Virus record (IMG/VR): IMGVR_UViG_3300028384_001500
Location: 1 to 64,000 of that record
Reading direction: 5' to 3' (one strand)
Length of the DNA stretch: 64,000 bases
Below the pieces are notes generated by a model, which ran no database searches, was not told where the DNA came from, and saw only the letters and a list, made by a program, of their open reading frames with translations. Positions 1,255 through 55,054 of the stretch are shown here, in pieces (positions within the stretch are counted from its first letter, which is position 1; every line of letters begins with the position of its first letter). The translations under genes were made by a program, and so were the position numbers.

Positions 1255-1283
1255 TTGTTATCTCATAACTAGGGGTTTAAAAG

Positions 1284-1356
1284 TACATCCAGCAGGACTC
1301 GAACCTGCGACCACCTGATTAAAAGTCAGATGCTCTACCAACTGAGCTATGGATGC
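1284..1356 (-). tRNA. trnK: tRNA-Lys(UUU)
   Basis: Cloverleaf: acceptor GCATCCA/TGGATGT, anticodon loop CTTTTAA, T-loop TTCGAGT, A73; CCA not encoded. Confidence 0.95.
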
Positions 1357-1368
1357 TTAAATAAAAAA

Positions 1369-1440
1369 GATGTGATCGAGATCTTTCCTAACATCTCATA
1401 AAATAAAAGTGGGGACGAGGAGCGTATGCTCGATCACATC
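1369..1440. repeat. 12-bp perfect inverted repeat enclosing 48 nt
   Basis: gatgtgatcgag (1369-1380) and ctcgatcacatc (1429-1440), between tRNA genes. Confidence 0.7.
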
Positions 1441-1449
1441 AGAAAAAGC

Positions 1450-1552
1450 TGCGAGACTAGGGAGTCGAACCCTAAAAAGCCTAAGATAAATTGCAAACTC
1501 TATCTCAGCCCAGTTGATCCGATTTGTTTTACACCAAACTCAACTGTCTCGC
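1450..1552 (-). ncRNA. tRNA-like RNA with canonical acceptor/T-arm and two long non-canonical hairpins
   Basis: Acceptor GCGAGAC/GTCTCGC plus A discriminator; T-arm TAGGG-TTCGACT-CCCTA; D and anticodon arms replaced by AGTTGA..TCAACT and GGGCTGAGATAGA..TTTATCTTAGGCTT hairpins. Confidence 0.7.
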
Positions 1553-1557
1553 ATAAA

Positions 1558-1635
1558 TGGACGCGGGAGCCGGATTCGAACCGACGACCTCTGGGTTATG
1601 AGCCCAGCAAGCTGACCTGACTGCTCCATCCCGCA
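1558..1635 (-). tRNA. trnfM: Initiator tRNA-fMet(CAU)
   Basis: Loop CTCATAA, three G-C pairs in the anticodon stem (CTGGG/CCCAG), A11:U24, weak U1.G72 pair, encoded CCA; unusual U73 discriminator. Confidence 0.9.
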
Positions 1636-1645
1636 ATAAAAAGAA

Positions 1646-1930
1646 TGTATCATGAGGGACTCGAACCCCCGACCCGCTGCTTAGCGCACCACTACAATTT
1701 TCATTGCCAATTTTCATTGTTTGTAGTCCGGACTATCCCTCAACCATAGAATTAATTATTCCTTAGGCCACTCCCGTCTAGTCTCTACACCTTCATAATT
1801 TCTTATGCTTGGCTCGGGATTGCCATTTTAAAGGTTTCCCCGAATTTGAGAGTGTATGCAATGTGATGTTTCCACCACAAGGCTCCTTTATCTTAAAGGC
1901 AGCTGCTCTATCCATCTGAGCTAATGATAC
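1646..1930 (-). tRNA. trnR: tRNA-Arg(UCU), intron-containing (exons 1896-1930 and 1646-1684)
   Basis: Joined exons give acceptor GTATCAT/ATGATAC, stem GCTGC/GCAGC, loop CTT+CTAA = CUUCUAA, and A20 (Arg identity element). Confidence 0.88.
1685..1895 (-). mobile_element. Group I intron, IC3/trnL-like, 211 nt, no ORF
   Basis: GAGCCTT..GGAAAC start, CAAATTCGGGGAAACC, GGCAATCCCGAGCCAA, GGTGTAGAGACTA, GATAGTCC; P3 CACTCTC/GGGAGTG, P4 TCGGG/CCCGA, P7 GACTA/TAGTC; terminal G; P1 exon CUU paired with GAG. Confidence 0.88.
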
Positions 1931-1970
1931 ATATAATTTATAGCAATTTTAAAGATCTTGTTATAAGAAT

Positions 1971-1999
1971 ATTATAACTAACATTTTTTAGTATTACAT
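1971..1999 (-). promoter_or_regulatory. Class I promoter-like motif ATGTAA-N17-TATAAT upstream of tRNA-Arg
   Basis: Exact 17-nt spacer, A-tract upstream, about 40 nt before the tRNA 5' end. Confidence 0.65.
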
Positions 2000-2017
2000 T
2001 TTTTTATTTTATAATAA

Positions 2018-2108
2018 CAAGGGCGTGAGTCTCTAGCATATCATTAGATGATTACTAGCACACATGGGAACTCATCGTTTAAGATTGCCTGCCTGAGCAA
2101 TCCCCTCG
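2018..2108 (-). ncRNA. Candidate structured RNA downstream of tRNA-Leu
   Basis: Closing stem CGAGGG/CCCTTG, hairpin GATTGC/GCAATC, stem TGAGT/ACTCA enclosing CTAG/CTAG and ATCAT/ATGAT. Confidence 0.35.
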
Positions 2109-2120
2109 TATTCTATAAAG

Positions 2121-2204
2121 TGCCTCGGGCGGGACTTGAACCCGCACTCCCTATCGGAAACAAGATTTTAAGTCTTGCGTGTCTACCAATTCCACCACCA
2201 AGGC
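2121..2204 (-). tRNA. trnL: tRNA-Leu(UAA), intron-less
   Basis: Acceptor GCCTTGG/CCGAGGC, loop CTTAAAA, long variable arm, T-loop TTCAAGT, A73. Confidence 0.95.
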
Positions 2205-19187: not shown

Positions 19188-20819
19188 TTAGACAATAAGC
19201 CTTTTAAAATCTTCACAGAATAATCTTTTATTTTTATTGTAGAACCTGTCCCAGTCACTATCAAGAATATAAGTTATTGCTGTATCTTCACTATTCCTTA
19301 CACTGCGCCCTACAGACTGCACAACTGTCATTGCAGTTTTAAGAGCATACCAGTCTGGAAATTTATTCATGCGCTTTTTAACAATAGGATCACCAAGCCA
19401 TGGATAAGGAACTTTACAGATAACTTGAAAACGACTTAAGTCACCTTTAAGATCAACTCCTTCTGTCATTGATGGTGATAACAGAACTGTGGGTTCTTTT
19501 GAACGCATATGCTGTTGGAGTACTTTATCTCTGTTTTCACTATTATGAATAAGAATTCTTTTTCCTAATTTTCCTTTGATATTGTTTTTAAGATAGTTTG
19601 CAATTCTATATGTATGACAATGAATTATTCCTTTTTCATTGCTGTGTTCTTGCATAATTGCTTTGACTGCTTTTTTAACATTAGGTAATGTTCCGTCAAT
19701 AGACTTAAAGCTCATGCTACCAACTGATGCGTTAATAATGGGACGATTTTCTACCGGGAAAGGTGAAGGAATACTAATTGAAGCGTATTGATCTTTTGGT
19801 ATACCTAACGATCTTGCAAAAGCGTCAGCGTTAAGAATGGTTGCTGACATAAGAATTACTTTATGGCCTAGTCTAAACAAGTATTCTTCAGCATAATTTG
19901 ATATATCAATTGCACGATATACAACCTTTACATACCCTCTCTTCTCTGTCTCTTGCTTTTCCATAACCCAATTGTCTTTATCATAATTGTCCATAAACTT
20001 TTTAAGTTTGTCAGCATGACCTTTCATCATATCGTATTTTAAAGATAATGATGACAATTCTTTAATTTTAGAAGCAATACCTAATTCATCAATTTGCTTT
20101 TCAAAATGCATGATTTGTGAAGTTAACTTTGGTTGATAAACGTTTTCAATCCATTTAACAAAGTTAACCGGTGTTACTTTGTCAGGCCATTTACACTTAA
20201 CAATTTTCTCAGCAAAATACTGACTTACACCTACCTCGACAAAACTACTAAGGACTTGTTCTGTGTTGTGAGCTTCATCAATAACTAACACGTTTCTTGG
20301 CCCAATACCGCCGCTAAATGTCGACTCAGTTAAAAAGTATGGAAAGTTAGTAACAGACTCTGGTGACTCGAGAAATTTCTTTTTTGCCTTTTTATATTTG
20401 CAATTAAACTTACATGCCTTAAAAAACCCAGATTTAGTATCAGCAGTTTTTAACATTTGTTGTGACGTACGACAATCATTTCCTTTATGAAAACCACATT
20501 TATAGTTTGTTGCAGAATATATAGACTTCATTTGTGTGTCTTTTGGACCTCCAAAGTCTTTTTCGTATTGTTCTTGTAGAATTTTTTGTGTCGTCAAGAA
20601 GTAAGCGCCAGGACTGAAACCTTCAACTTCTGAAGATTTATTATTAAAATATCTTGCCAGTGTTAATCCAATGGCAGACTTTCCCACACCTGTTCCTGCT
20701 TCGATAATACAAAATCTCTTTTTACTATTTTCAATTGCATTGATTGCAAATTCAATTGCATCACACTGTTCTTGACGAGGTTTTTTGTATGGAAAGTATT
20801 GTTTATATTCTTGCGTCAT
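19188..20819 (-). CDS. DinG/YoaA-like SF2 DNA helicase with probable Fe-S cluster
   Basis: EAGTGVGKS, four Cys (YKC..NDC..AC..NC), DEAH, MSAT, QSVGRSVR. Confidence 0.88.
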   Translation of the reverse strand: MTQEYKQYFPYKKPRQEQCDAIEFAINAIENSKKRFCIIEAGTGVGKSAIGLTLARYFNNKSSEVEGFSPGAYFLTTQKILQEQYEKDFGGPKDTQMKSIYSATNYKCGFHKGNDCRTSQQMLKTADTKSGFFKACKFNCKYKKAKKKFLESPESVTNFPYFLTESTFSGGIGPRNVLVIDEAHNTEQVLSSFVEVGVSQYFAEKIVKCKWPDKVTPVNFVKWIENVYQPKLTSQIMHFEKQIDELGIASKIKELSSLSLKYDMMKGHADKLKKFMDNYDKDNWVMEKQETEKRGYVKVVYRAIDISNYAEEYLFRLGHKVILMSATILNADAFARSLGIPKDQYASISIPSPFPVENRPIINASVGSMSFKSIDGTLPNVKKAVKAIMQEHSNEKGIIHCHTYRIANYLKNNIKGKLGKRILIHNSENRDKVLQQHMRSKEPTVLLSPSMTEGVDLKGDLSRFQVICKVPYPWLGDPIVKKRMNKFPDWYALKTAMTVVQSVGRSVRNSEDTAITYILDSDWDRFYNKNKRLFCEDFKRLIV

Positions 20820-34121: not shown

Positions 34122-34493
34122 TCAATGTTTACCATCAAAAGGATTGTCTCTTTTAAAATAATTTCTTCTTCTTCTAGCAGCATCCGGATCTTCTAAATCT
34201 AGTTCAGGTATTCCGTAATTACCAGACTTAAGTCCTTTTTCTTGTAATATTTTTCTTGCTTCTTCAGCCGGGTTTTCTGATGATCTAATTTTTTCCAAGT
34301 CTCTTCTGGTAAAAGCTTTTTTCATTCTTTCATCTAACATTTTGTGTGCATAAAGTATTGCTGCTGGAGTCCCAACAGCTAAAACAGCCATTGCAGCTTT
34401 AGCTAGTAAAGTTACCATACTAACCATATCACCTTCACTAATTACACCTTCGTTTAATAAAATTTTTTTAATTTGTCTTTTTGTAATTTTCAC
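34122..34493 (-). CDS. Leader-bearing protein with hydrophobic helix
   Basis: MKITKRQIKKILLNEG; AAMAVLAVGTPAAILYA. Confidence 0.7.
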   Translation of the reverse strand: MKITKRQIKKILLNEGVISEGDMVSMVTLLAKAAMAVLAVGTPAAILYAHKMLDERMKKAFTRRDLEKIRSSENPAEEARKILQEKGLKSGNYGIPELDLEDPDAARRRRNYFKRDNPFDGKH

Positions 34494-34858
34494 TTTAGCT
34501 TTCTCCTGCTAAATTTTTTAATTTCCTCAAGTGATTCAAGGATTACTATTTTTACATCATTAACTTCAGATACACTTTGCATTTTGTGGCGTGCAGCATC
34601 AGTCCAGTAACCTTTTACTTCAATATATGTATCATGCTCAGGCAAGTAAAAATCAGGAATGTAGTTTCTTTTTCGACCGGTTTTTGAGAAGTACTTAAGC
34701 TTCATGTCTTCTCTACGATCCCACAATATCTTAAGATGATCTAGCCTCTCTGCCATGGCAACTTCCCATGTACTGTCCATAAGTACTTTACTTCCGTCTT
34801 TTCTTTCGTATAGTGACTGTTTACTCCACAACTTTTTCTTTTTCTTTTTTCTAGGCAT
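34490..34858 (-). CDS. TnsA-N/head-completion-like PD-(D/E)XK endonuclease
   Basis: MDSTWE..KRNYIPDFYL..YIEVKGY; start MPRKK at 34858 via ATGA overlap. Confidence 0.7.
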   Translation of the reverse strand: MPRKKKKKKLWSKQSLYERKDGSKVLMDSTWEVAMAERLDHLKILWDRREDMKLKYFSKTGRKRNYIPDFYLPEHDTYIEVKGYWTDAARHKMQSVSEVNDVKIVILESLEEIKKFSRRKLK

Positions 34859-35292
34859 CAGGTTGAAAAATACCAATTATCCCCTTCGGGTGTAGTTAAG
34901 ACCATGTCATCAACATTGACGACTATATAACCTAAATCAAATAAGTCTTGCAACATTAACTCAACGTGTTCCGATGTAAATTCACCAAAGTCACTGCCGC
35001 CTAGGAGACTATAGTCATTAGAAGAAAGACGTTCTAAGAATCTTGTACCTTCATCTACAACATTGTCGATATGAATACCATAACTACTATCCCAGTTATA
35101 GTCGTCACTACGCATTTCAATAAAACTAAATAGATCTTTTTTGCCTTCTTCATAGTGAGGGTGATTTCTTTCCAGCTGATCTGGGTGTATGCCTAACGTA
35201 ACTCGCATTGCATCTCGATCTAAAGGTCGCTTAGGTGTAAACTTGGTTTCTGCGATTAAACGTCTTAATTGTCTTCTTGTAATTTTTATCAA
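34858..35292 (-). CDS. Leader-bearing protein
   Basis: MIKITRRQLRRLIAE. Confidence 0.7.
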   Translation of the reverse strand: MIKITRRQLRRLIAETKFTPKRPLDRDAMRVTLGIHPDQLERNHPHYEEGKKDLFSFIEMRSDDYNWDSSYGIHIDNVVDEGTRFLERLSSNDYSLLGGSDFGEFTSEHVELMLQDLFDLGYIVVNVDDMVLTTPEGDNWYFST

Positions 35293-35837
35293 AGATACTC
35301 CCCCACTTTTTCCATCGCCTTTTCATATTTATCAGCGAGGTATCCATCAGCTGGCTTAGGGCCATAGCTATATATATCATAACTATTGTAACCATGTTTG
35401 TCAGCTAAGTGATCGTGGATATGTTGATATATATCCATTCCTATTTCTCTAAAATCAAAAGCAGCGCTTCCTTGATCGAATATACTAATTCCTTGAGACT
35501 CTAATTCAACTATTTTTTGATAGCGCCTAATCAATTCATCTGTTAACTCATATGGGATCGGAATGGTTATTGTTTCGTTTGGTGACTGCCCATTTTTCAC
35601 AGCAACTGTATCTAAGGTGACACGGTTTGCAGCTTCGTATGTTCTTAAATCATCTACATAACTACGGTCTTCTGGGTAACCAAAAGAGTGGGCAAAAGAA
35701 TCAGCGTCTACCTCCAGATCTGACGAACTGGCAAAATCATCAATCTTGCCTAGTAGATCTTCACTAGGTACATTAGGAATACTAGGCTTGATTGTTGTTT
35801 CTATTAATCGTCTTAAGATGTTTCTTGTAATTTTCAT
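35289..35837 (-). CDS. Leader-bearing protein
   Basis: MKITRNILRRLIE. Confidence 0.7.
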   Translation of the reverse strand: MKITRNILRRLIETTIKPSIPNVPSEDLLGKIDDFASSSDLEVDADSFAHSFGYPEDRSYVDDLRTYEAANRVTLDTVAVKNGQSPNETITIPIPYELTDELIRRYQKIVELESQGISIFDQGSAAFDFREIGMDIYQHIHDHLADKHGYNSYDIYSYGPKPADGYLADKYEKAMEKVGEYL

Positions 35838-35889
35838 TGTAACCTCTGATGACTATAATTATACAGATCACTATGAAAAATTAAAAAAA

Positions 35890-35908
35890 TGGTGGACCGC
35901 GTGGGAGT
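35890..35908 (-). repeat. Displaced tmRNA 3' fragment ACTCCCACGCGGTCCACCA
   Basis: Shares GCGGTCCAC with the tmRNA 3' end (36680-36688), carries an encoded CCA, and is followed by a T-run. Confidence 0.75.
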
Positions 35909-35910
35909 AG

Positions 35911-36624
35911 TCACTCTTTAACATCGTAATACTTCACTATTCTTGGTGTTCTATTTGCTAACTCTTTTTTGACAATATTGAATGTTTGCTGAAGATTGTA
36001 TTTTGTATTGTCAATTCTTATTAGTACTTTGCTGTTTTCTTTGGCGTATTCTTCTTTAAGTGTGTCAGTCTTTTTTGTATTTTCAAAGTCATGTTTTTCA
36101 AATACTTTTTCAAAATGCCAAATGCCGTCACATTCAATTAAAAATAAATTATCTTTTGATGCGATATCAAAATCAATCCTTCTGTTATTAAACTTAATAT
36201 TGTGATGGCGCTTGAATTCGTCGCCTAACATTTTAGCCAGTGATCTTTCAAGTTTTGATGAAAATCTTTTGCAACTGGCAGGTTTGCCCATCTGTTCTTT
36301 CCAACTTTTATTATTTAAAGCTGCTTTACTTAGTTTTTCTTTTGTTTCTTTTAAATACGATCCTGCCCTTGATCGATTACCACAACTTCTTGAACATGTT
36401 TTCTTGTAGCCCTTTTCACCTGGCTGCTTTCCTTTTCTTCTTCTAAATACTGTTTCGCATATTGGACAGTTAACATCTTCAAATCTTTCCGGTCTAGAGC
36501 TTTTCTCTTTTAGAGACTGATACCCTTCTTTGCTAAATTTTTCTTCTTTGTGTTGCCATCTGACATGATTTGCTTTAGCCTGAAAAGTTTTAAATTCCTT
36601 ATTGCATTCTTGACATTTATACAT
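35911..36624 (-). CDS. Free-standing homing-endonuclease-like protein (zinc fingers, NUMOD3-like, Vsr/DUF559-like nuclease)
   Basis: CQEC..HVRWQH, CPIC..CSRSC, KETKEKLSKAA, FDI..LIECDGIWH; ATG 36624 after GGAGG. Confidence 0.75.
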   Translation of the reverse strand: MYKCQECNKEFKTFQAKANHVRWQHKEEKFSKEGYQSLKEKSSRPERFEDVNCPICETVFRRRKGKQPGEKGYKKTCSRSCGNRSRAGSYLKETKEKLSKAALNNKSWKEQMGKPASCKRFSSKLERSLAKMLGDEFKRHHNIKFNNRRIDFDIASKDNLFLIECDGIWHFEKVFEKHDFENTKKTDTLKEEYAKENSKVLIRIDNTKYNLQQTFNIVKKELANRTPRIVKYYDVKE

Positions 36625-36630
36625 AAAAAA

Positions 36631-36660
36631 GTCCTCCAATATTATTATATATCAGAGGAC
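36631..36660 (-). promoter_or_regulatory. Hairpin sequestering the endonuclease RBS
   Basis: GTCCTCT-GATAT..ATATT-GGAGGAC, then TTTTTT and ATG; TATAAT in the loop. Confidence 0.6.
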
Positions 36661-36680
36661 CCACTAAGTTTCCAAAAAAG

Positions 36681-37040
36681 TGGACCGCAGCAGAATCGAA
36701 CTGCTGTCCGCAATAGTCTTGGTTCTAGTCATTCACAAGCTTAGTTATCTTTTTTCTCCTGATAACAGGGATAGTCACCTCTTTCCACCAACTCTAGGTA
36801 ACATTGAGTTCCCACCTCATACTACGAGGATAACCATTTTAGTCATGATATATCGCCTCGACTAACTGGCTAACCTCTTGTTTTTCACCGGAAGAGATAC
36901 CGGCGTTGATTAAGCAGCTAAAGCTACTGACTCAAAGTGTGCGTTATTGTTTGCAACTAAATTGTTTGAACTGTTAAGGTCGAGTCTCACCTGCTTGCAC
37001 TGTCTCCTTGATTCTATTCCGTCGAAGCCATTAGCGGCCC
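36681..37040 (-). ncRNA. ssrA: tmRNA, 360 nt; tag (A)ANNNAHFESVALAA encoded at 36910-36954
   Basis: 5' GGGCCGC..GGCTTCGAC; 3' AGCAG-TTCGATT-CTGCT-GCGGTCC-A; G3.U70 alanine determinant; tag ORF ends ALAA-stop. Confidence 0.93.
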
Positions 37041-37156
37041 ATATATTTTTATTATACTATATCTATGTTGATATTACATTAAATAAATTACTAATATGTA
37101 GAAGACTTATGAATATAACCATCATATTCCTTATTTGCCTTTAATATCTATACTAC

Positions 37157-38428
37157 TTACTTATCAAATGAAGTGTAAGATGGGTCAAGTGAATCTACGC
37201 TGACGTCGCTAAGTACTTCACTTATTCTAATATTGCTAATGTTTGTTTCAAATTGATGTGCTGCCAAGCCCACATCTAAATTCATGTCTTTACCGCCAAT
37301 ATCAAGTGCAACTAATTCACCGTCAGCTCTTCTTCCAAATTGTTCCTCATGAATATCACGCCATGTTAATGGGTCAATATTTTTTTCAGGATCGCCTGAC
37401 TTAAGTATGATTTCATCAATTAAGTTTAAGATATCTAAGTAGTCCTCGTATAAAAGACTGTTTTTGTTCATTGGCAGTTTCTTTCTTTGTCTTATTCTTT
37501 GGTTTTTTAAATGATCAATAAAAATTTGATTAAACTGATGAACTTCAGGAAAATTATTAACTATACCTAATACATTTAAAAATAACATTTTTAGTGTAAG
37601 AGGACTTCCGTTGGTTGTTTTAACTAAAGCCTCACCTGTTTCTTTACCGTGTGTAGAAAATAAATTATTGACTTCACTAGCAATTCTTCTTACATGTTTA
37701 GGAGGTGTGTTAGGATTGCTAATGTAATTTATAAGTTGTTGAAACGTACTAAGATTATATTTTTTTAAAAATCTTAAACCACTGTAACCCGCTTTAAGTA
37801 TATCTTGATAAACAGCTTCAATCTGATTTGCAATTGTATTTCCTAAACTATATAACGCAATTATATCATTAAATTTAGTAAACCTTATTTGTATAAATTT
37901 TGCTAATTCAATGTCTATATTTTTAAAAACAAATCGATCAGGAATAATTCTTTCCATTATTATGTAGTAAAGTCTATTTATTTGATAGTTTTTATTGCTT
38001 TTGTTGTGAGTCGACCCACGCTTCCAATATACAACCGGTTGATCCAAGTTAATAACACCTTTTGAATAAACTTTTGCAGTTTTTTCATGACTATTGGAAA
38101 CAAAACCTAGGTTTTTAGCAGAGTTGTCAATTGAATGAAATAACTTAATAACTTTAAAATCGTCTAGTGAAACAACAATACCTTCTGCACCGCTAGCAAC
38201 AATCCTAGGCATGTGCATCCGATTCTCAAAGCGAGGAAGTCTTTCTATGTCAGCTAGGTAATCAACAATTTTTTCTGCTAAAGGCGCATTAAGTGACCAA
38301 CCTTTATCGTGTGAAGGATCACTAGCAGCACTAGCGTCGTATAAATAAAAATTCTCACTAAGCAAATTTAACCTTTTACTTATTGATTCGCGTATTAATC
38401 CCCTTATTATGTTTTTTAAATTAGCCAA
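37157..38428 (-). CDS. Leader-bearing protein-kinase-like protein
   Basis: ASGAEGIV Gly-loop, VIK, YIIMERI hinge, WRDIHEEQ catalytic-loop-like, ALDIG; long insertion between the lobes. Confidence 0.6.
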   Translation of the reverse strand: MANLKNIIRGLIRESISKRLNLLSENFYLYDASAASDPSHDKGWSLNAPLAEKIVDYLADIERLPRFENRMHMPRIVASGAEGIVVSLDDFKVIKLFHSIDNSAKNLGFVSNSHEKTAKVYSKGVINLDQPVVYWKRGSTHNKSNKNYQINRLYYIIMERIIPDRFVFKNIDIELAKFIQIRFTKFNDIIALYSLGNTIANQIEAVYQDILKAGYSGLRFLKKYNLSTFQQLINYISNPNTPPKHVRRIASEVNNLFSTHGKETGEALVKTTNGSPLTLKMLFLNVLGIVNNFPEVHQFNQIFIDHLKNQRIRQRKKLPMNKNSLLYEDYLDILNLIDEIILKSGDPEKNIDPLTWRDIHEEQFGRRADGELVALDIGGKDMNLDVGLAAHQFETNISNIRISEVLSDVSVDSLDPSYTSFDK

Positions 38429-53443: not shown

Positions 53444-55054
53444 TTACTCAGAATCGCTTTTAACTTCAATAAGAGAACAATCAGCAGATAAAAGCATAGT
53501 TGCAGCAGACACAGCATTTTCTAATGCACAACGGGATACTTTGGCGGGATCGATTACACCTAACTCAAACATGTCTCCAAAAACCTTGTTGCGAACGTCA
53601 TACCCAACGTTAGAGACACCTTTTGACTCTTTCTGTATGTTTGTTAAGATATTGTGATGGGATAATCCAGCGTTGCTTAGAATTTGTCTAAATGGCTCTT
53701 TGCATGCACTTATAAGCAAGTCTTTTCCAGCTGCAATATTTTTATCAATATCGCCGTGATCTAATTTACTTCCAAAAGATGATGCTGCCTGATACAAAGC
53801 CATCCCACCACCGGGTAGAACACCTTCTTCTAGGGCAGCGCGAGTTGCATGCAAAGCATCATCAACACGATCATAACGCTCAATAAGTTCAGATTCAGTT
53901 GCAGCACCAACTCTAAGGATCGCTATGCCTCCCGATAATTGCTGGAGCCTATACTTTAAAAGCAATTTTTCTTCATTGCTAAGACCCGGATACTTGAGAC
54001 TGTCTTTAATTGCTAGCATTCTTTCTTTTGAATTATCTAGTTTTGCATTTTCATCTTTGATGACAAGTGTTTTTGACTTTTGAATAATTATCTTTTTGCA
54101 AGTACCGAACATTTCCATTTCAAACGAAGTCATGTCAAATCCACCGTCGACAACACGCCCACCTACTATTGATTGTAGATCTAATAATAGATCATGTCTA
54201 GCACCGCCAAATCCAGGCGATTTAATAGCTGCGATTTGCAAAGATCCTTTAACTCTATTTAAAACCATTCCTTGCATTGCATCACCTTCAATTTCATTTG
54301 CAATAACAACAATTGGGCGACCGGTATCTAAGGCTAATTCTAAAGGCTTCATTAACTCTCTAATTGAATTAAACGTTCTATCTGCCATTAACAGTAACGG
54401 ATTTTTAAATTCTGCAACCATTTTATTTTTATCTGTAACAAAATACGGTGATAAAAACCCTCGTTCCATTTGAAATCCGTCGACAACAGTTAAAGAGCTA
54501 TTAAATCCTTTTGCTTCTTCAACTAGAACATGGCCATCAGGCCCAGCAGCTTCAATTGCCTTTACAATTAATTTAGCAATTTCTGTTTCGCCATTTGCTG
54601 ATATTGTTGCAACTTTTAAAAGATCATCAGTACCAGCGACCTCAACTGCACAGCTTTTGATATTGTCTGTTATTTCTTTTTTTATAAGATCAATTCCTAG
54701 CTTAAGCTGGTCAATATCAAATCCCGCAGTTTTATATCTTAAGCCTTCATTATAAATAAACTGAGCTAAAACTGTCGCTGTGGTCGTACCATCACCTGCT
54801 TCTTCAGCTGTTCTACTTGCAGACTCTTTAAGAATTTGCACACCTAGGTTTTCAACTTCATCAACTAGATTAATTGATTGTGCAACTGTTACACCGTCTT
54901 TTGTTACGAGCGGATGTTGCCCGGGTCTATGTATAAGAACTAATTTACCTTTCGGGCCCATAGTTACCTTAACTGTATTAGCTAGTTTATCGATACCTCT
55001 TTTAATTTTTATATCTAAATCTTGACCAGAATAAATCTCTCTTTTAATTTCCAT
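53444..55054 (-). CDS. groL: Chaperonin GroEL
   Basis: TMGPKG, TKDGVTVA, GDGTTTATV, ISANG, KSPGFG, RVDDALHATRAALEEGVLPGGG, GVIDPAKV; no GGM tail. Confidence 0.95.
   Translation of the reverse strand: MEIKREIYSGQDLDIKIKRGIDKLANTVKVTMGPKGKLVLIHRPGQHPLVTKDGVTVAQSINLVDEVENLGVQILKESASRTAEEAGDGTTTATVLAQFIYNEGLRYKTAGFDIDQLKLGIDLIKKEITDNIKSCAVEVAGTDDLLKVATISANGETEIAKLIVKAIEAAGPDGHVLVEEAKGFNSSLTVVDGFQMERGFLSPYFVTDKNKMVAEFKNPLLLMADRTFNSIRELMKPLELALDTGRPIVVIANEIEGDAMQGMVLNRVKGSLQIAAIKSPGFGGARHDLLLDLQSIVGGRVVDGGFDMTSFEMEMFGTCKKIIIQKSKTLVIKDENAKLDNSKERMLAIKDSLKYPGLSNEEKLLLKYRLQQLSGGIAILRVGAATESELIERYDRVDDALHATRAALEEGVLPGGGMALYQAASSFGSKLDHGDIDKNIAAGKDLLISACKEPFRQILSNAGLSHHNILTNIQKESKGVSNVGYDVRNKVFGDMFELGVIDPAKVSRCALENAVSAATMLLSADCSLIEVKSDSE

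What the first reader, a model, noticed from the sequence alone, without database searches (positions are those of the whole stretch)
35890..36688. Homing endonuclease inserted at the tmRNA 3' end, leaving a displaced CCA-bearing fragment
The endonuclease gene is bracketed by a 9-bp direct repeat (GCGGTCCAC). The upstream copy completes the tmRNA with T-stem AGCAG/CTGCT and no CCA. The downstream copy has a different T-stem strand (CCCAC) and an encoded CCA. This is the footprint of island integration into ssrA, yet there is no integrase. Inference: an integrase-free element invaded by supplying a recoded, cleavage-resistant tmRNA T-arm.
Basis: partly seen in the sequence, partly recalled or inferred. 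Interest (0 to 1): 0.68.

Follow-up and report, generated by a model that had tools for sequence, protein, structure and literature searches.

The report
Homing endonuclease beside phage tmRNA gene
A selfish nuclease gene sits at the 3' end of a marine jumbo phage's tmRNA gene: the original 3' end lies pushed downstream and the working gene has a rewritten, still base-paired T-stem, which relatives without the nuclease gene confirm.

Summary
The window is part of a 236.6-kb viral record. On the minus strand lie an intact tmRNA gene (37040-36680), a 237-aa zinc-finger plus Vsr-fold nuclease gene (36624-35911), and a 19-nt copy of a tmRNA 3' end with encoded CCA (35908-35890).

All five different endonuclease-free relatives found (six loci) carry the T-arm GTGGG-TTCGACT-CCCAC plus CCA. 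In four loci this arm is joined directly to the same downstream gene. The orphan fragment in the window is exactly that native end. Carriers of the gene have recoded, fully paired T-stems: AGCAG/CTGCT in the window and one other lineage, GAGGG/CCCTC in a third. No integrase or resolvase is found in the record.

Homologues at 27-90% identity lie next to a tmRNA T-arm in nearly every context examined:
- after standard tmRNA genes;
- just before permuted tmRNA genes;
- in a 735-kb megaphage, after a tmRNA whose T-loop is split by a group I intron.

Best reading: a free-standing homing endonuclease that targets the tmRNA T-arm, analogous to T4 SegB. Cleavage and resistance to it remain untested.

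The parts
36680..37040 (-). tmRNA gene (standard one-piece form), tag ANNNAHFESVALAA. The acceptor pairs GGGCCGC with GCGGTCC and includes G3:U70. CCA is not encoded.
   Evidence: ARAGORN; Rfam RF00023 at 79.2 bits; sequence
36689..36705 (-). Recoded T-arm AGCAG-TTCGATT-CTGCT. It differs at 9 of 17 positions from the arm shared by all endonuclease-free relatives, and all 5 stem pairs remain Watson-Crick.
   Evidence: Alignment; Fisher p about 1e-5 against the rest of the gene; no mispairs flagged in the Rfam alignment
36655..36675 (-). Degenerate pseudo-arm (T-loop-like plus acceptor-like, TTGGAAA..GGGTCCTC). It is the counterpart of a conserved GTTCRA-N10-CTCCAC element found upstream of every homologous ORF.
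   Evidence: Alignment of upstream regions
36629..36662 (-). Hairpin that pairs the 3' part of the pseudo-arm with the Shine-Dalgarno GGAGG. A TATATAAT -10-like box (36651-36644) lies in its loop.
   Evidence: 14 pairs; -17.5 kcal/mol, z = -3.6, 0 of 200 shuffles as stable
35911..36624 (-). Free-standing homing-endonuclease-like gene, 237 aa. It has an N-terminal C2H2 zinc finger, a second Cys cluster, a NUMOD3-like stretch and a C-terminal Vsr/DUF559-like nuclease. Invariant residues are D153, E164, D166 and H170.
   Evidence: PHROG hits to HNH, intron-encoded and homing endonuclease families, E 6e-10 to 1e-8; alignment; model pLDDT 82; VIA Z 10.4 to Vsr, 9.1 to 3hrl, 8.9 to I-Bth0305I
35890..35908 (-). 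Displaced native tmRNA 3' end, ACT-CCCAC-GCGGTCC-A-CCA: the last 3 nt of the T-loop, the T-stem 3' strand, the acceptor 3' strand, the discriminator and encoded CCA.
   Evidence: Identical to the 3' end of the endonuclease-free alleles, with homology running on into the downstream intergenic region and gene
35289..35837 (-). Downstream gene (182 aa, MKITR...). In endonuclease-free relatives it follows the tmRNA CCA directly.

Best explanation
The 0.8-kb segment is a free-standing homing endonuclease cassette made of a pseudo-arm, its own promoter and the gene. It entered the T-arm/3' end of a phage tmRNA gene.

Shown:
- Relatives with an empty site exist.
- The orphan 19-mer is the native 3' end, starting inside the T-loop.
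- The working gene ends in a new copy of the 3' segment whose T-stem has been rewritten on both strands, so that it still pairs.
- The protein has a Vsr-type nuclease fold with zinc-finger and NUMOD3-like DNA-binding parts.
- The protein family is found next to tmRNA T-arms in standard, permuted and intron-split genes.

Inferred:
- The enzyme recognises the conserved native T-arm DNA of endonuclease-free phage genomes during co-infection and cuts in or near the T-loop.
- The break is repaired from the carrier genome. The tmRNA body provides homology on the left; the displaced fragment plus downstream gene provides it on the right. Repair copies the cassette in.
- The carrier is spared for two reasons. 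Its working arm is recoded and lacks the CCA/downstream context, and its native copy is truncated at the T-loop.
- The tmRNA stays functional because the stem changes are compensatory, and the host adds CCA, as it must for the phage's CCA-less tRNAs.
- Translation of the nuclease is probably limited to transcripts that start at its own promoter inside the hairpin that hides the ribosome-binding site.
For: - Empty sites: six loci (five different sequences) have GTGGG-TTCGACT-CCCAC-GCGGTCCACCA. Four of them are followed directly by the same downstream gene.
- The native arm is invariant (0 of 17 differences) even between tmRNA bodies that are 22% diverged. The window arm differs at 9 of 17 positions against about 30 of 344 elsewhere, p about 1e-5.
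- The endonuclease-free loci L010 and L011 share the tmRNA body type of the carriers, so the arm state tracks the gene and not the lineage.
- Three carrier lineages all keep the native-type displaced fragment with CCA: AGCAG/CTGCT in the window and L029, GAGGG/CCCTC in L013-16.
- The native arm, allowing up to 2 mismatches, is absent from the carrier's 236-kb record.
- Fold: Vsr Z 10.4, the DUF559-like 3hrl Z 9.1, the I-Bth0305I catalytic domain Z 8.9. PHROG homing endonuclease families match. Some members give weak NUMOD3, DUF559 and MTES_1575 hits.
- Family context: homologues lie after standard tmRNAs (L017, L019), immediately before permuted tmRNAs (L021, L023, L024, L025, L027), and after a tmRNA whose T-loop holds a group I intron at 96 bits in megaphage LR756501.1.
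- L018 shows the same bracket with a 12-nt repeat and differing T-stem strands.
- Precedent: T4 SegB recognises the GGTTCRANTCC motif of the T-psi-C stem-loop of tRNA genes (PMC2330249).
- No integrase or resolvase is found in the record.
- The phage's tRNA-Lys and tRNA-Leu also lack encoded CCA.
Against: - No cleavage data exist. Neither the recognition site nor resistance of the recoded arm is shown.
- In L013-16 the arm differs from the native one by only one base pair plus one flanking base, which is not significant on its own.
- T4 SegB carriers are not protected by site changes (PMC2330249), so recoding need not be the immunity mechanism.
- In L029 the acceptor strand differs from the window's in both copies in concert. 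Simple homing with co-conversion does not explain this.
- How the first duplication arose is unknown.
- L017 and L019 keep a CCA-bearing arm upstream of the gene, and L026 shows no tmRNA nearby.
- Carrier lineages are few and related, so the association rests on roughly three independent carrier lineages against two endonuclease-free body types.
Confidence: 0.7

Rival explanations
1. The insertion is a homing endonuclease cassette, but the recoded T-stem is not what protects the carrier. Protection would come from the insertion itself (loss of the CCA/downstream context, truncation of the native copy) or from tight expression control. The arm differences would then be hitch-hiked donor sequence or drift.
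For: T4 SegB carriers keep cleavable sites and rely on expression control (PMC2330249). L013-16 differ from the native arm by only one pair plus one base. A hairpin sequestering the ribosome-binding site is present. Ten of 12 endonuclease-adjacent arms lack CCA, whereas all endonuclease-free arms have it.
Against: The native arm is invariant across bodies 22% diverged, yet it is changed in every carrier lineage, always with compensation. The same AGCAG arm accompanies the gene on two native backgrounds. In the megaphage the T-loop is instead split by an intron, which points to the arm itself as the sensitive site.
Confidence: 0.2
2. The protein is not selfish. It is a tmRNA-associated factor, for example a zinc-finger RNA nuclease that processes CCA-less, permuted or intron-bearing tmRNA precursors, and it is co-inherited with the tmRNA gene.
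For: It lies next to tmRNA genes of three different gene forms. RAP-domain RNA-binding proteins are among the fold matches at Z 7.5-8.7. Most adjacent arms lack encoded CCA.
Against: Close relatives with nearly identical tmRNA bodies lack the gene entirely. The displaced native 3' end and the empty sites show an insertion event. The domain set (zinc finger, NUMOD3-like, Vsr-like) and the PHROG hits are those of homing endonucleases. The phage's tRNAs also lack CCA without any such partner.
Confidence: 0.07
3. The bracket is the scar of integrase-mediated island or prophage integration into ssrA, or a captured attP/attB.
For: A direct repeat of the tmRNA 3' end with a displaced CCA-bearing fragment is the classic footprint of such islands.
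Against: The bracket holds one 237-aa nuclease gene only. No Phage_integrase or Resolvase match exists in the 236-kb record. The target is a phage-borne tmRNA gene: no cellular genome among 185,579 species has this acceptor/arm combination.
Confidence: 0.02
4. A decayed group I intron with its endonuclease once split the T-loop. Alternatively, the repeat is due to chance or misassembly.
For: Group I introns do sit in tmRNA T-loops (PMC11915505), and one does so next to a homologue in L032. The displaced fragment starts inside the T-loop.
Against: No intron model matches in window 34500-38000. The upstream gene is complete on its own. The 5' T-stem strand AGCAG cannot pair with CCCAC. The 9-mer is unique to these two sites, and the architecture recurs in six assemblies.
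Confidence: 0.01

Closest known systems
T4 SegB, a free-standing GIY-YIG homing endonuclease in the tRNA gene cluster (PMC2330249; PMC13096335)
   Same: It is a free-standing phage endonuclease gene placed among tRNA-like genes. Its recognition site contains the conserved T-psi-C stem-loop motif. The gene is absent from close relatives. A 2026 study links it to local duplication or amplification through microhomology.
   Different: The nuclease fold here is Vsr/DUF559-like rather than GIY-YIG, and the target gene is tmRNA. Here the carrier has a displaced native 3' end and a compensatorily recoded stem. T4 keeps cleavable sites.
Group I introns, some with LAGLIDADG endonucleases, in the T-psi-C loop of tmRNA genes (PMC11915505)
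   Same: A mobile element is aimed at the tmRNA T-loop. The displaced fragment in the window begins inside the T-loop. A homologue of this ORF lies beside such an intron in a megaphage.
   Different: There is no ribozyme in the window. Gene integrity is restored by a duplicated 3' segment, not by splicing. The endonuclease is neither LAGLIDADG nor intron-encoded.
Genomic islands and prophages that integrate into the ssrA 3' end by tyrosine integrases (background knowledge; mentioned in PMC11915505)
   Same: The element supplies a replacement 3' end, and the original CCA-bearing 3' piece is left as a direct repeat at the far side.
   Different: There is no integrase. The element is 0.8 kb with a single nuclease gene. 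The target lies in a phage genome. The replacement arm is recoded rather than identical.
I-Bth0305I / EDxHD homing endonucleases (PDB 3r3p)
   Same: The catalytic domain is Vsr-like (Z 8.9, 96 residues aligned). Both are phage or metagenomic mobile nucleases.
   Different: Sequence identity is only 10%. The motif here is E-x-D-G-x-W-H, not a contiguous EDxHD (the EDxHD motif is recalled from memory). The N-terminal zinc-finger module is different. This gene is free-standing, not intron- or intein-borne.
Collaborative homing: free-standing F-CphI next to the intron-bearing psbA of cyanophage S-PM2 (PMC6083498; PMC2988022)
   Same: In the megaphage locus L032 a free-standing homologue sits next to a gene whose presumed target is interrupted by an endonuclease-less group I intron.
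   Different: In the window itself no intron is involved; a recoded stem plus a duplication takes its place. The nuclease family is also different.

Membership tests
Free-standing phage homing endonuclease genes | Encodes a site-specific DNA endonuclease of a class used by homing endonucleases | tested here: met
   The fold is Vsr-like, with I-Bth0305I at Z 8.9. PHROG homing, intron-encoded and HNH endonuclease families match at E 6e-10 to 1e-8. Acidic and His residues are invariant. Activity itself was not assayed.
Free-standing phage homing endonuclease genes | Presence/absence polymorphism at the same locus among close relatives, with intact flanks | tested here: met
   Six empty-site loci were found, four with the same downstream gene. 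L010 is nearly identical in tmRNA body to the carriers L013-15.
Free-standing phage homing endonuclease genes | Cleaves the endonuclease-less allele near the insertion site and is preferentially inherited in mixed infection | not testable with these tools
   This needs the purified protein and crosses or plasmid-to-phage homing assays.
EDxHD (I-Bth0305I-like) homing endonucleases | Vsr-like catalytic core | tested here: met
   VIA Z 10.4 to Vsr and 8.9 to 3r3p over residues 119-226.
EDxHD (I-Bth0305I-like) homing endonucleases | Contiguous E-D-x-H-D catalytic motif (recalled from memory) | tested here: inconclusive
   The alignment shows E164-x-D166-G-x-W-H170. This resembles DUF559/MTES_1575 more closely (weak Pfam hits). 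No residue-level superposition was made.
Integrase-borne islands at ssrA | Tyrosine or serine recombinase carried by the element | tested here: not met
   PF00589 and PF00239 are absent from the 236-kb record. The bracket holds only the nuclease ORF.
Integrase-borne islands at ssrA | Direct repeat of the tmRNA 3' end flanking the element | tested here: met
   A 9-nt exact repeat, unique in the window. About 20 nt are repeated if the recoded positions are allowed.
Intron-form tmRNA genes | Group I ribozyme between the two halves of the T-loop | tested here: not met
   No RF00028 match in window 34500-38000. The feature is met in the homologue's locus L032 at 96 bits.
tmRNA (RF00023) | Covariance-model match above the gathering score, a tag reading frame, and a tRNA-like domain with G3:U70 | tested here: met
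   79.2 bits against 47. The tag ends in ALAA. The acceptor pairing was read directly.

The most novel reading that the evidence does not exclude
This may be an undescribed lineage of zinc-finger/Vsr-fold homing endonucleases dedicated to phage tmRNA genes. Under this reading, conflict with its target drives compensatory rewriting of an RNA stem. Carriers would escape in at least three ways: a recoded T-stem plus a duplicated 3' end, a group I intron in the T-loop (collaborative homing), or placement ahead of permuted genes. The conserved pseudo-arm just upstream of the cassette's promoter would be a non-cleavable decoy site, through which the enzyme represses its own gene as I-TevI does.
Probability: 0.4. 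Interest if true: 0.75.

Novelty: new variant of a known kind. Interest (0 to 1): 0.62.

Why it matters
tmRNA genes are known targets of integrase-borne islands and of group I introns. A free-standing endonuclease that targets them, and is tolerated through a duplicated and compensatorily recoded 3' arm, would be a third route of invasion.

It would also give a natural example of a selfish DNA element forcing covariation in a structured RNA. That offers a clean experimental pair, native against recoded arm, for mapping a new nuclease specificity.

The finding also explains why the 3' ends of marine phage tmRNA genes can look duplicated or CCA-less, which matters for annotating them.

Tried and rejected
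- blastn of the region against 50,697 phage records gave no match.
- The search for related loci with the two flanking proteins found no confirmed relatives.
- The pattern spanning the native 3' end plus downstream T-run gave 0 hits in viral contigs. This is a storage-chunk boundary artefact, because L003 ends exactly there and the full record does continue.
- Scans for a native CCGGG/CCCGG arm and for further AGCAG arms in viral-contig hit only unrelated GC-rich phages.
- Two genome-contig scans for the native arm/acceptor found nothing, so no host was identified.
- The last viral scan, for permuted relatives, used a fixed spacer and found nothing. blastn of the permuted tmRNA against phages also found nothing. 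Whether T4-like endonuclease-free relatives differ in their arm is therefore untested.
- Foldseek alone gave no significant match; VIA-align did.
- The CCA-adding enzyme and SmpB are absent from the 77%-complete record.
- My mononucleotide-shuffle test of flanking repeats over-counts AT-rich words and was set aside in favour.
- The HEG tree leaves the three carrier lineages unresolved.
- The exons of the L032 tmRNA were read separately. The joined, spliced sequence was not built or searched, and the exact splice sites remain unresolved. The Rfam intron model ends 7 nt before the CGAAT that would complete the loop.

Full report
**What is in the window.** The window is the first 64 kb of a 236,652-bp linear IMG/VR virus record, estimated 77% complete. 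It is about 35% G+C and nearly all its genes lie on the minus strand. It carries tRNA genes, a helicase and a GroEL-like chaperonin, so it looks like a large marine phage.

On the minus strand ARAGORN calls a tmRNA at 37040-36680 with tag ANNNAHFESVALAA. Rfam RF00023 matches end to end at 79 bits, and the T-arm and acceptor pairs are all standard. The features that follow, in order on the minus strand, are these:
- The gene ends AGCAG-TTCGATT-CTGCT-GCGGTCC-A-C.
- A run of six T follows.
- The ORF runs from 36624 to 35911.
- Three bases after the ORF's stop codon comes ACT-CCCAC-GCGGTCC-A-CCA (35908-35890).
- After that come a T-run, a TATAAT-like box and the next gene (35837-35289).

The 9-mer GCGGTCCAC occurs only at these two places in 64 kb, where 0.05 copies are expected. 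The one correction is that the ORF should start at the ATG at 36624, as in all homologues.

**Relatives without the gene.** A 22-nt probe from the tmRNA 5' end found one viral contig, G001. A degenerate probe that left the T-stem free found five metagenome contigs. All six loci, which represent five different sequences, read GTGGG-TTCGACT-CCCAC-GCGGTCC-A-CCA.

In G001, L008, L009 and L012 the CCA is followed directly by the same T-run, promoter-like box and MKITR gene that lie downstream of the orphan fragment in the window. These are empty sites, and the orphan 19-mer in the window is the native 3' end. It is displaced by about 0.8 kb and begins inside the T-loop.

The native arm shows 0 of 17 differences even between tmRNA bodies that differ at 22% of positions. 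The window's arm differs at 9 of 17 positions, against about 30 of 344 elsewhere (Fisher p about 1e-5). The endonuclease-free loci L010 and L011 share the body type of the carriers. The arm state therefore follows the presence of the gene, not the tmRNA lineage.

**Other carriers.** The word search found 25 homologues of the ORF.
- Contigs encoding the 90%-identical proteins (L013-L016, from four assemblies) have the same layout as the window, but with a third arm, GAGGG-TTCGACT-CCCTC. One flanking base is also changed. There is again no CCA, and the same displaced native fragment with CCA is present.
- L029 (88% identical) has the window's AGCAG/CTGCT stem on a different native background. 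Its displaced fragment reads CCCGG-CGGGTCC-A-CCA, and its working acceptor strand is also CGGGTCC.
- L018 (54% identical) shows a 12-nt repeat on both sides of the gene. The T-stem strands differ, and only the downstream copy has CCA.

Every carrier whose two sides can be compared has a paired but altered working stem and a native-type orphan. The native arm, allowing up to two mismatches, is absent from the carrier's whole record.

**The protein.** Pfam gives only weak hits: C2H2 zinc finger, DUF5889 and, in some members, NUMOD3, DUF559 and MTES_1575. PHROGs place it with HNH, intron-encoded and homing endonuclease families at E 6e-10 to 1e-8.

The family alignment has these invariant positions:
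- C4, C7, H20 and H25, forming a C2H2 finger.
- A second Cys cluster.
- D153, E164, D166 and H170.

An AlphaFold model built on that alignment has mean pLDDT 82. Foldseek found nothing significant. The exhaustive VIA search matched residues 118-228 to Vsr (Z 10.4), to a DUF559-like protein, 3hrl (Z 9.1, rmsd 2.2), and to the catalytic domain of the homing endonuclease I-Bth0305I (Z 8.9). The gene is single-copy in the record. No tyrosine integrase or resolvase is found anywhere in the record.

**Family-wide context.**
- L017 and L019/L020 have the gene 70-100 nt after a standard tmRNA.
- In T4-like contigs, which have a Portal_T4 gene nearby (L021/22, L023, L024, L025, L027), the gene ends 5-40 nt before a circularly permuted tmRNA. 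The first element of such a gene is the T-arm and acceptor 3' strand.
- L026 has no tmRNA nearby.
- The only full-length homologue in deposited phage genomes is in the 735-kb megaphage LR756501.1. There the order is: a tmRNA first exon ending ..CAGGG-TT; a group I intron (RF00028, 96 bits); a second exon, CGAAT-CCCTG-CGGGTCC-A-C; two terminator-like hairpins; a promoter-like box; and an intact homologue. I read the exons separately and did not build or search the joined sequence. The exact splice sites are unresolved.

A free-standing endonuclease beside a gene whose conserved site is split by an endonuclease-less intron is the arrangement called collaborative homing (PMC6083498, PMC2988022). 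It points independently to the T-loop/T-arm as this family's target.

**A pseudo-arm in the cassette.** Aligning the 75 nt upstream of each homologue shows a conserved GTTCRA-N10-CTCCAC element. It has the spacing of a real T-loop, T-stem 3' strand and acceptor end. It lies 4-7 nt before a TATATA(A/G)AATAA box. The window and its close kin have a degenerate version at 36675-36655. Its 3' part pairs with the Shine-Dalgarno sequence in a hairpin of -17.5 kcal/mol (z = -3.6), and the -10-like box lies in the loop. This resembles the way T4 mobile endonucleases are limited to late transcripts (PMC2988022). Whether the pseudo-arm is a relic of earlier insertions or an operator is not known.

**Mechanism.** The closest experimentally studied system is T4 SegB. 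It is a free-standing GIY-YIG enzyme in the tRNA cluster, and its 27-bp site contains the GGTTCRANTCC motif of the T-psi-C stem-loop (PMC2330249). It has recently been tied to local amplification through microhomology (PMC13096335).

By analogy I propose the following sequence of events. The enzyme cuts the invariant native arm of co-infecting endonuclease-free genomes. Repair then copies the cassette from the carrier, using the tmRNA body and the displaced fragment plus downstream gene as homology. The carrier escapes cutting because its working arm is recoded and its native copy is truncated.

The tmRNA should still work. The stems remain paired and G3:U70 is kept. The phage's own tRNA-Lys and tRNA-Leu are also CCA-less, so the host must add CCA; no CCA-adding enzyme or SmpB was found in the record.

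These points remain unexplained:
- How the first duplication arose.
- Why the acceptor strand in L029 differs from the window's in both copies.
- Whether recoding or mere disruption of the site confers immunity. T4 does not rely on site changes.

**Novelty.** tmRNA genes are known to be invaded by integrase-borne islands and by T-loop group I introns, some of which carry LAGLIDADG genes (PMC11915505). Phage-borne permuted tmRNAs are also known (PMC9004378). Full-text searches found no description of a free-standing endonuclease tied to tmRNA genes, or of a recoded arm with a displaced 3' end. Given SegB, this is a new variant of a known kind rather than a new category.

Noticed in passing
L032 (LR756501.1 715810-719529, reverse complement), about 780-2262: The 735-kb megaphage has an intron-form tmRNA: a group I intron at 96 bits lies inside the T-loop. 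It is followed by two terminator hairpins and a full-length homologue of the window's nuclease. ARAGORN misses this tmRNA, and the exact splice sites do not resolve with the Rfam model end.
   Followed up: partly
L021/L022, L023, L024, L025, L027 (T4-like contigs with a Portal_T4 gene nearby): Homologues at 27-35% identity end 5-40 nt before circularly permuted tmRNA genes. Each is preceded by a T-arm/acceptor-like pseudo-arm. The functional arms there also lack encoded CCA.
   Followed up: partly
window 36655-36675 and the upstream regions of all homologues: A conserved GTTCRA-N10-CTCCAC pseudo-arm lies just upstream of the cassette's promoter-like box. It is either a relic of earlier invasions or a possible operator/decoy site.
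   Followed up: partly
window 34490-34876 (-): A 128-aa ORF two genes downstream matches PHROG endonuclease, Holliday-junction resolvase and homing endonuclease families (E 3e-15 to 3e-4). It is syntenic in L013, so it is probably a resident nuclease rather than a second mobile gene.
   Followed up: no
window 34122-35837 (-); also L008, L012, L013, L017: Three consecutive small genes all begin MKIT(R/K)RQ(L/I)(R/K)(R/K)(L/I)I. This is a paralogous family with a shared N-terminal motif and no Pfam or PHROG match.
   Followed up: no
window 1283-2204 (-): A cluster of tRNA-Lys, tRNA-Met and tRNA-Leu. Lys and Leu end in the discriminator plus C and then T-runs, with no encoded CCA, like the carrier's tmRNA.
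   Followed up: partly
window 53444-55054 (-) and 19188-20819 (-): A GroEL-like chaperonin (Cpn60_TCP1, E 3.5e-64) and a ResIII/Helicase_C_2 helicase. Most other large ORFs have no Pfam match.
   Followed up: no
L013 323-2851: A related phage contig carries two HATPase_c proteins and a response-regulator receiver gene upstream of its tmRNA.
   Followed up: no
L013-L015 tmRNA genes: ARAGORN reports the tag ETKNYKGV at position 182 for these genes. The canonical frame ending in VALAA is present at the usual place, so the call seems to be misled by a 26-nt insertion in the pseudoknot region.
   Followed up: no
tmRNA alignment of the clade: The 5' 135 nt and the 3' 70 nt are 90-96% conserved, but the central pseudoknot region comes in two unrelated versions. 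This suggests mosaic recombination inside the gene.
   Followed up: no
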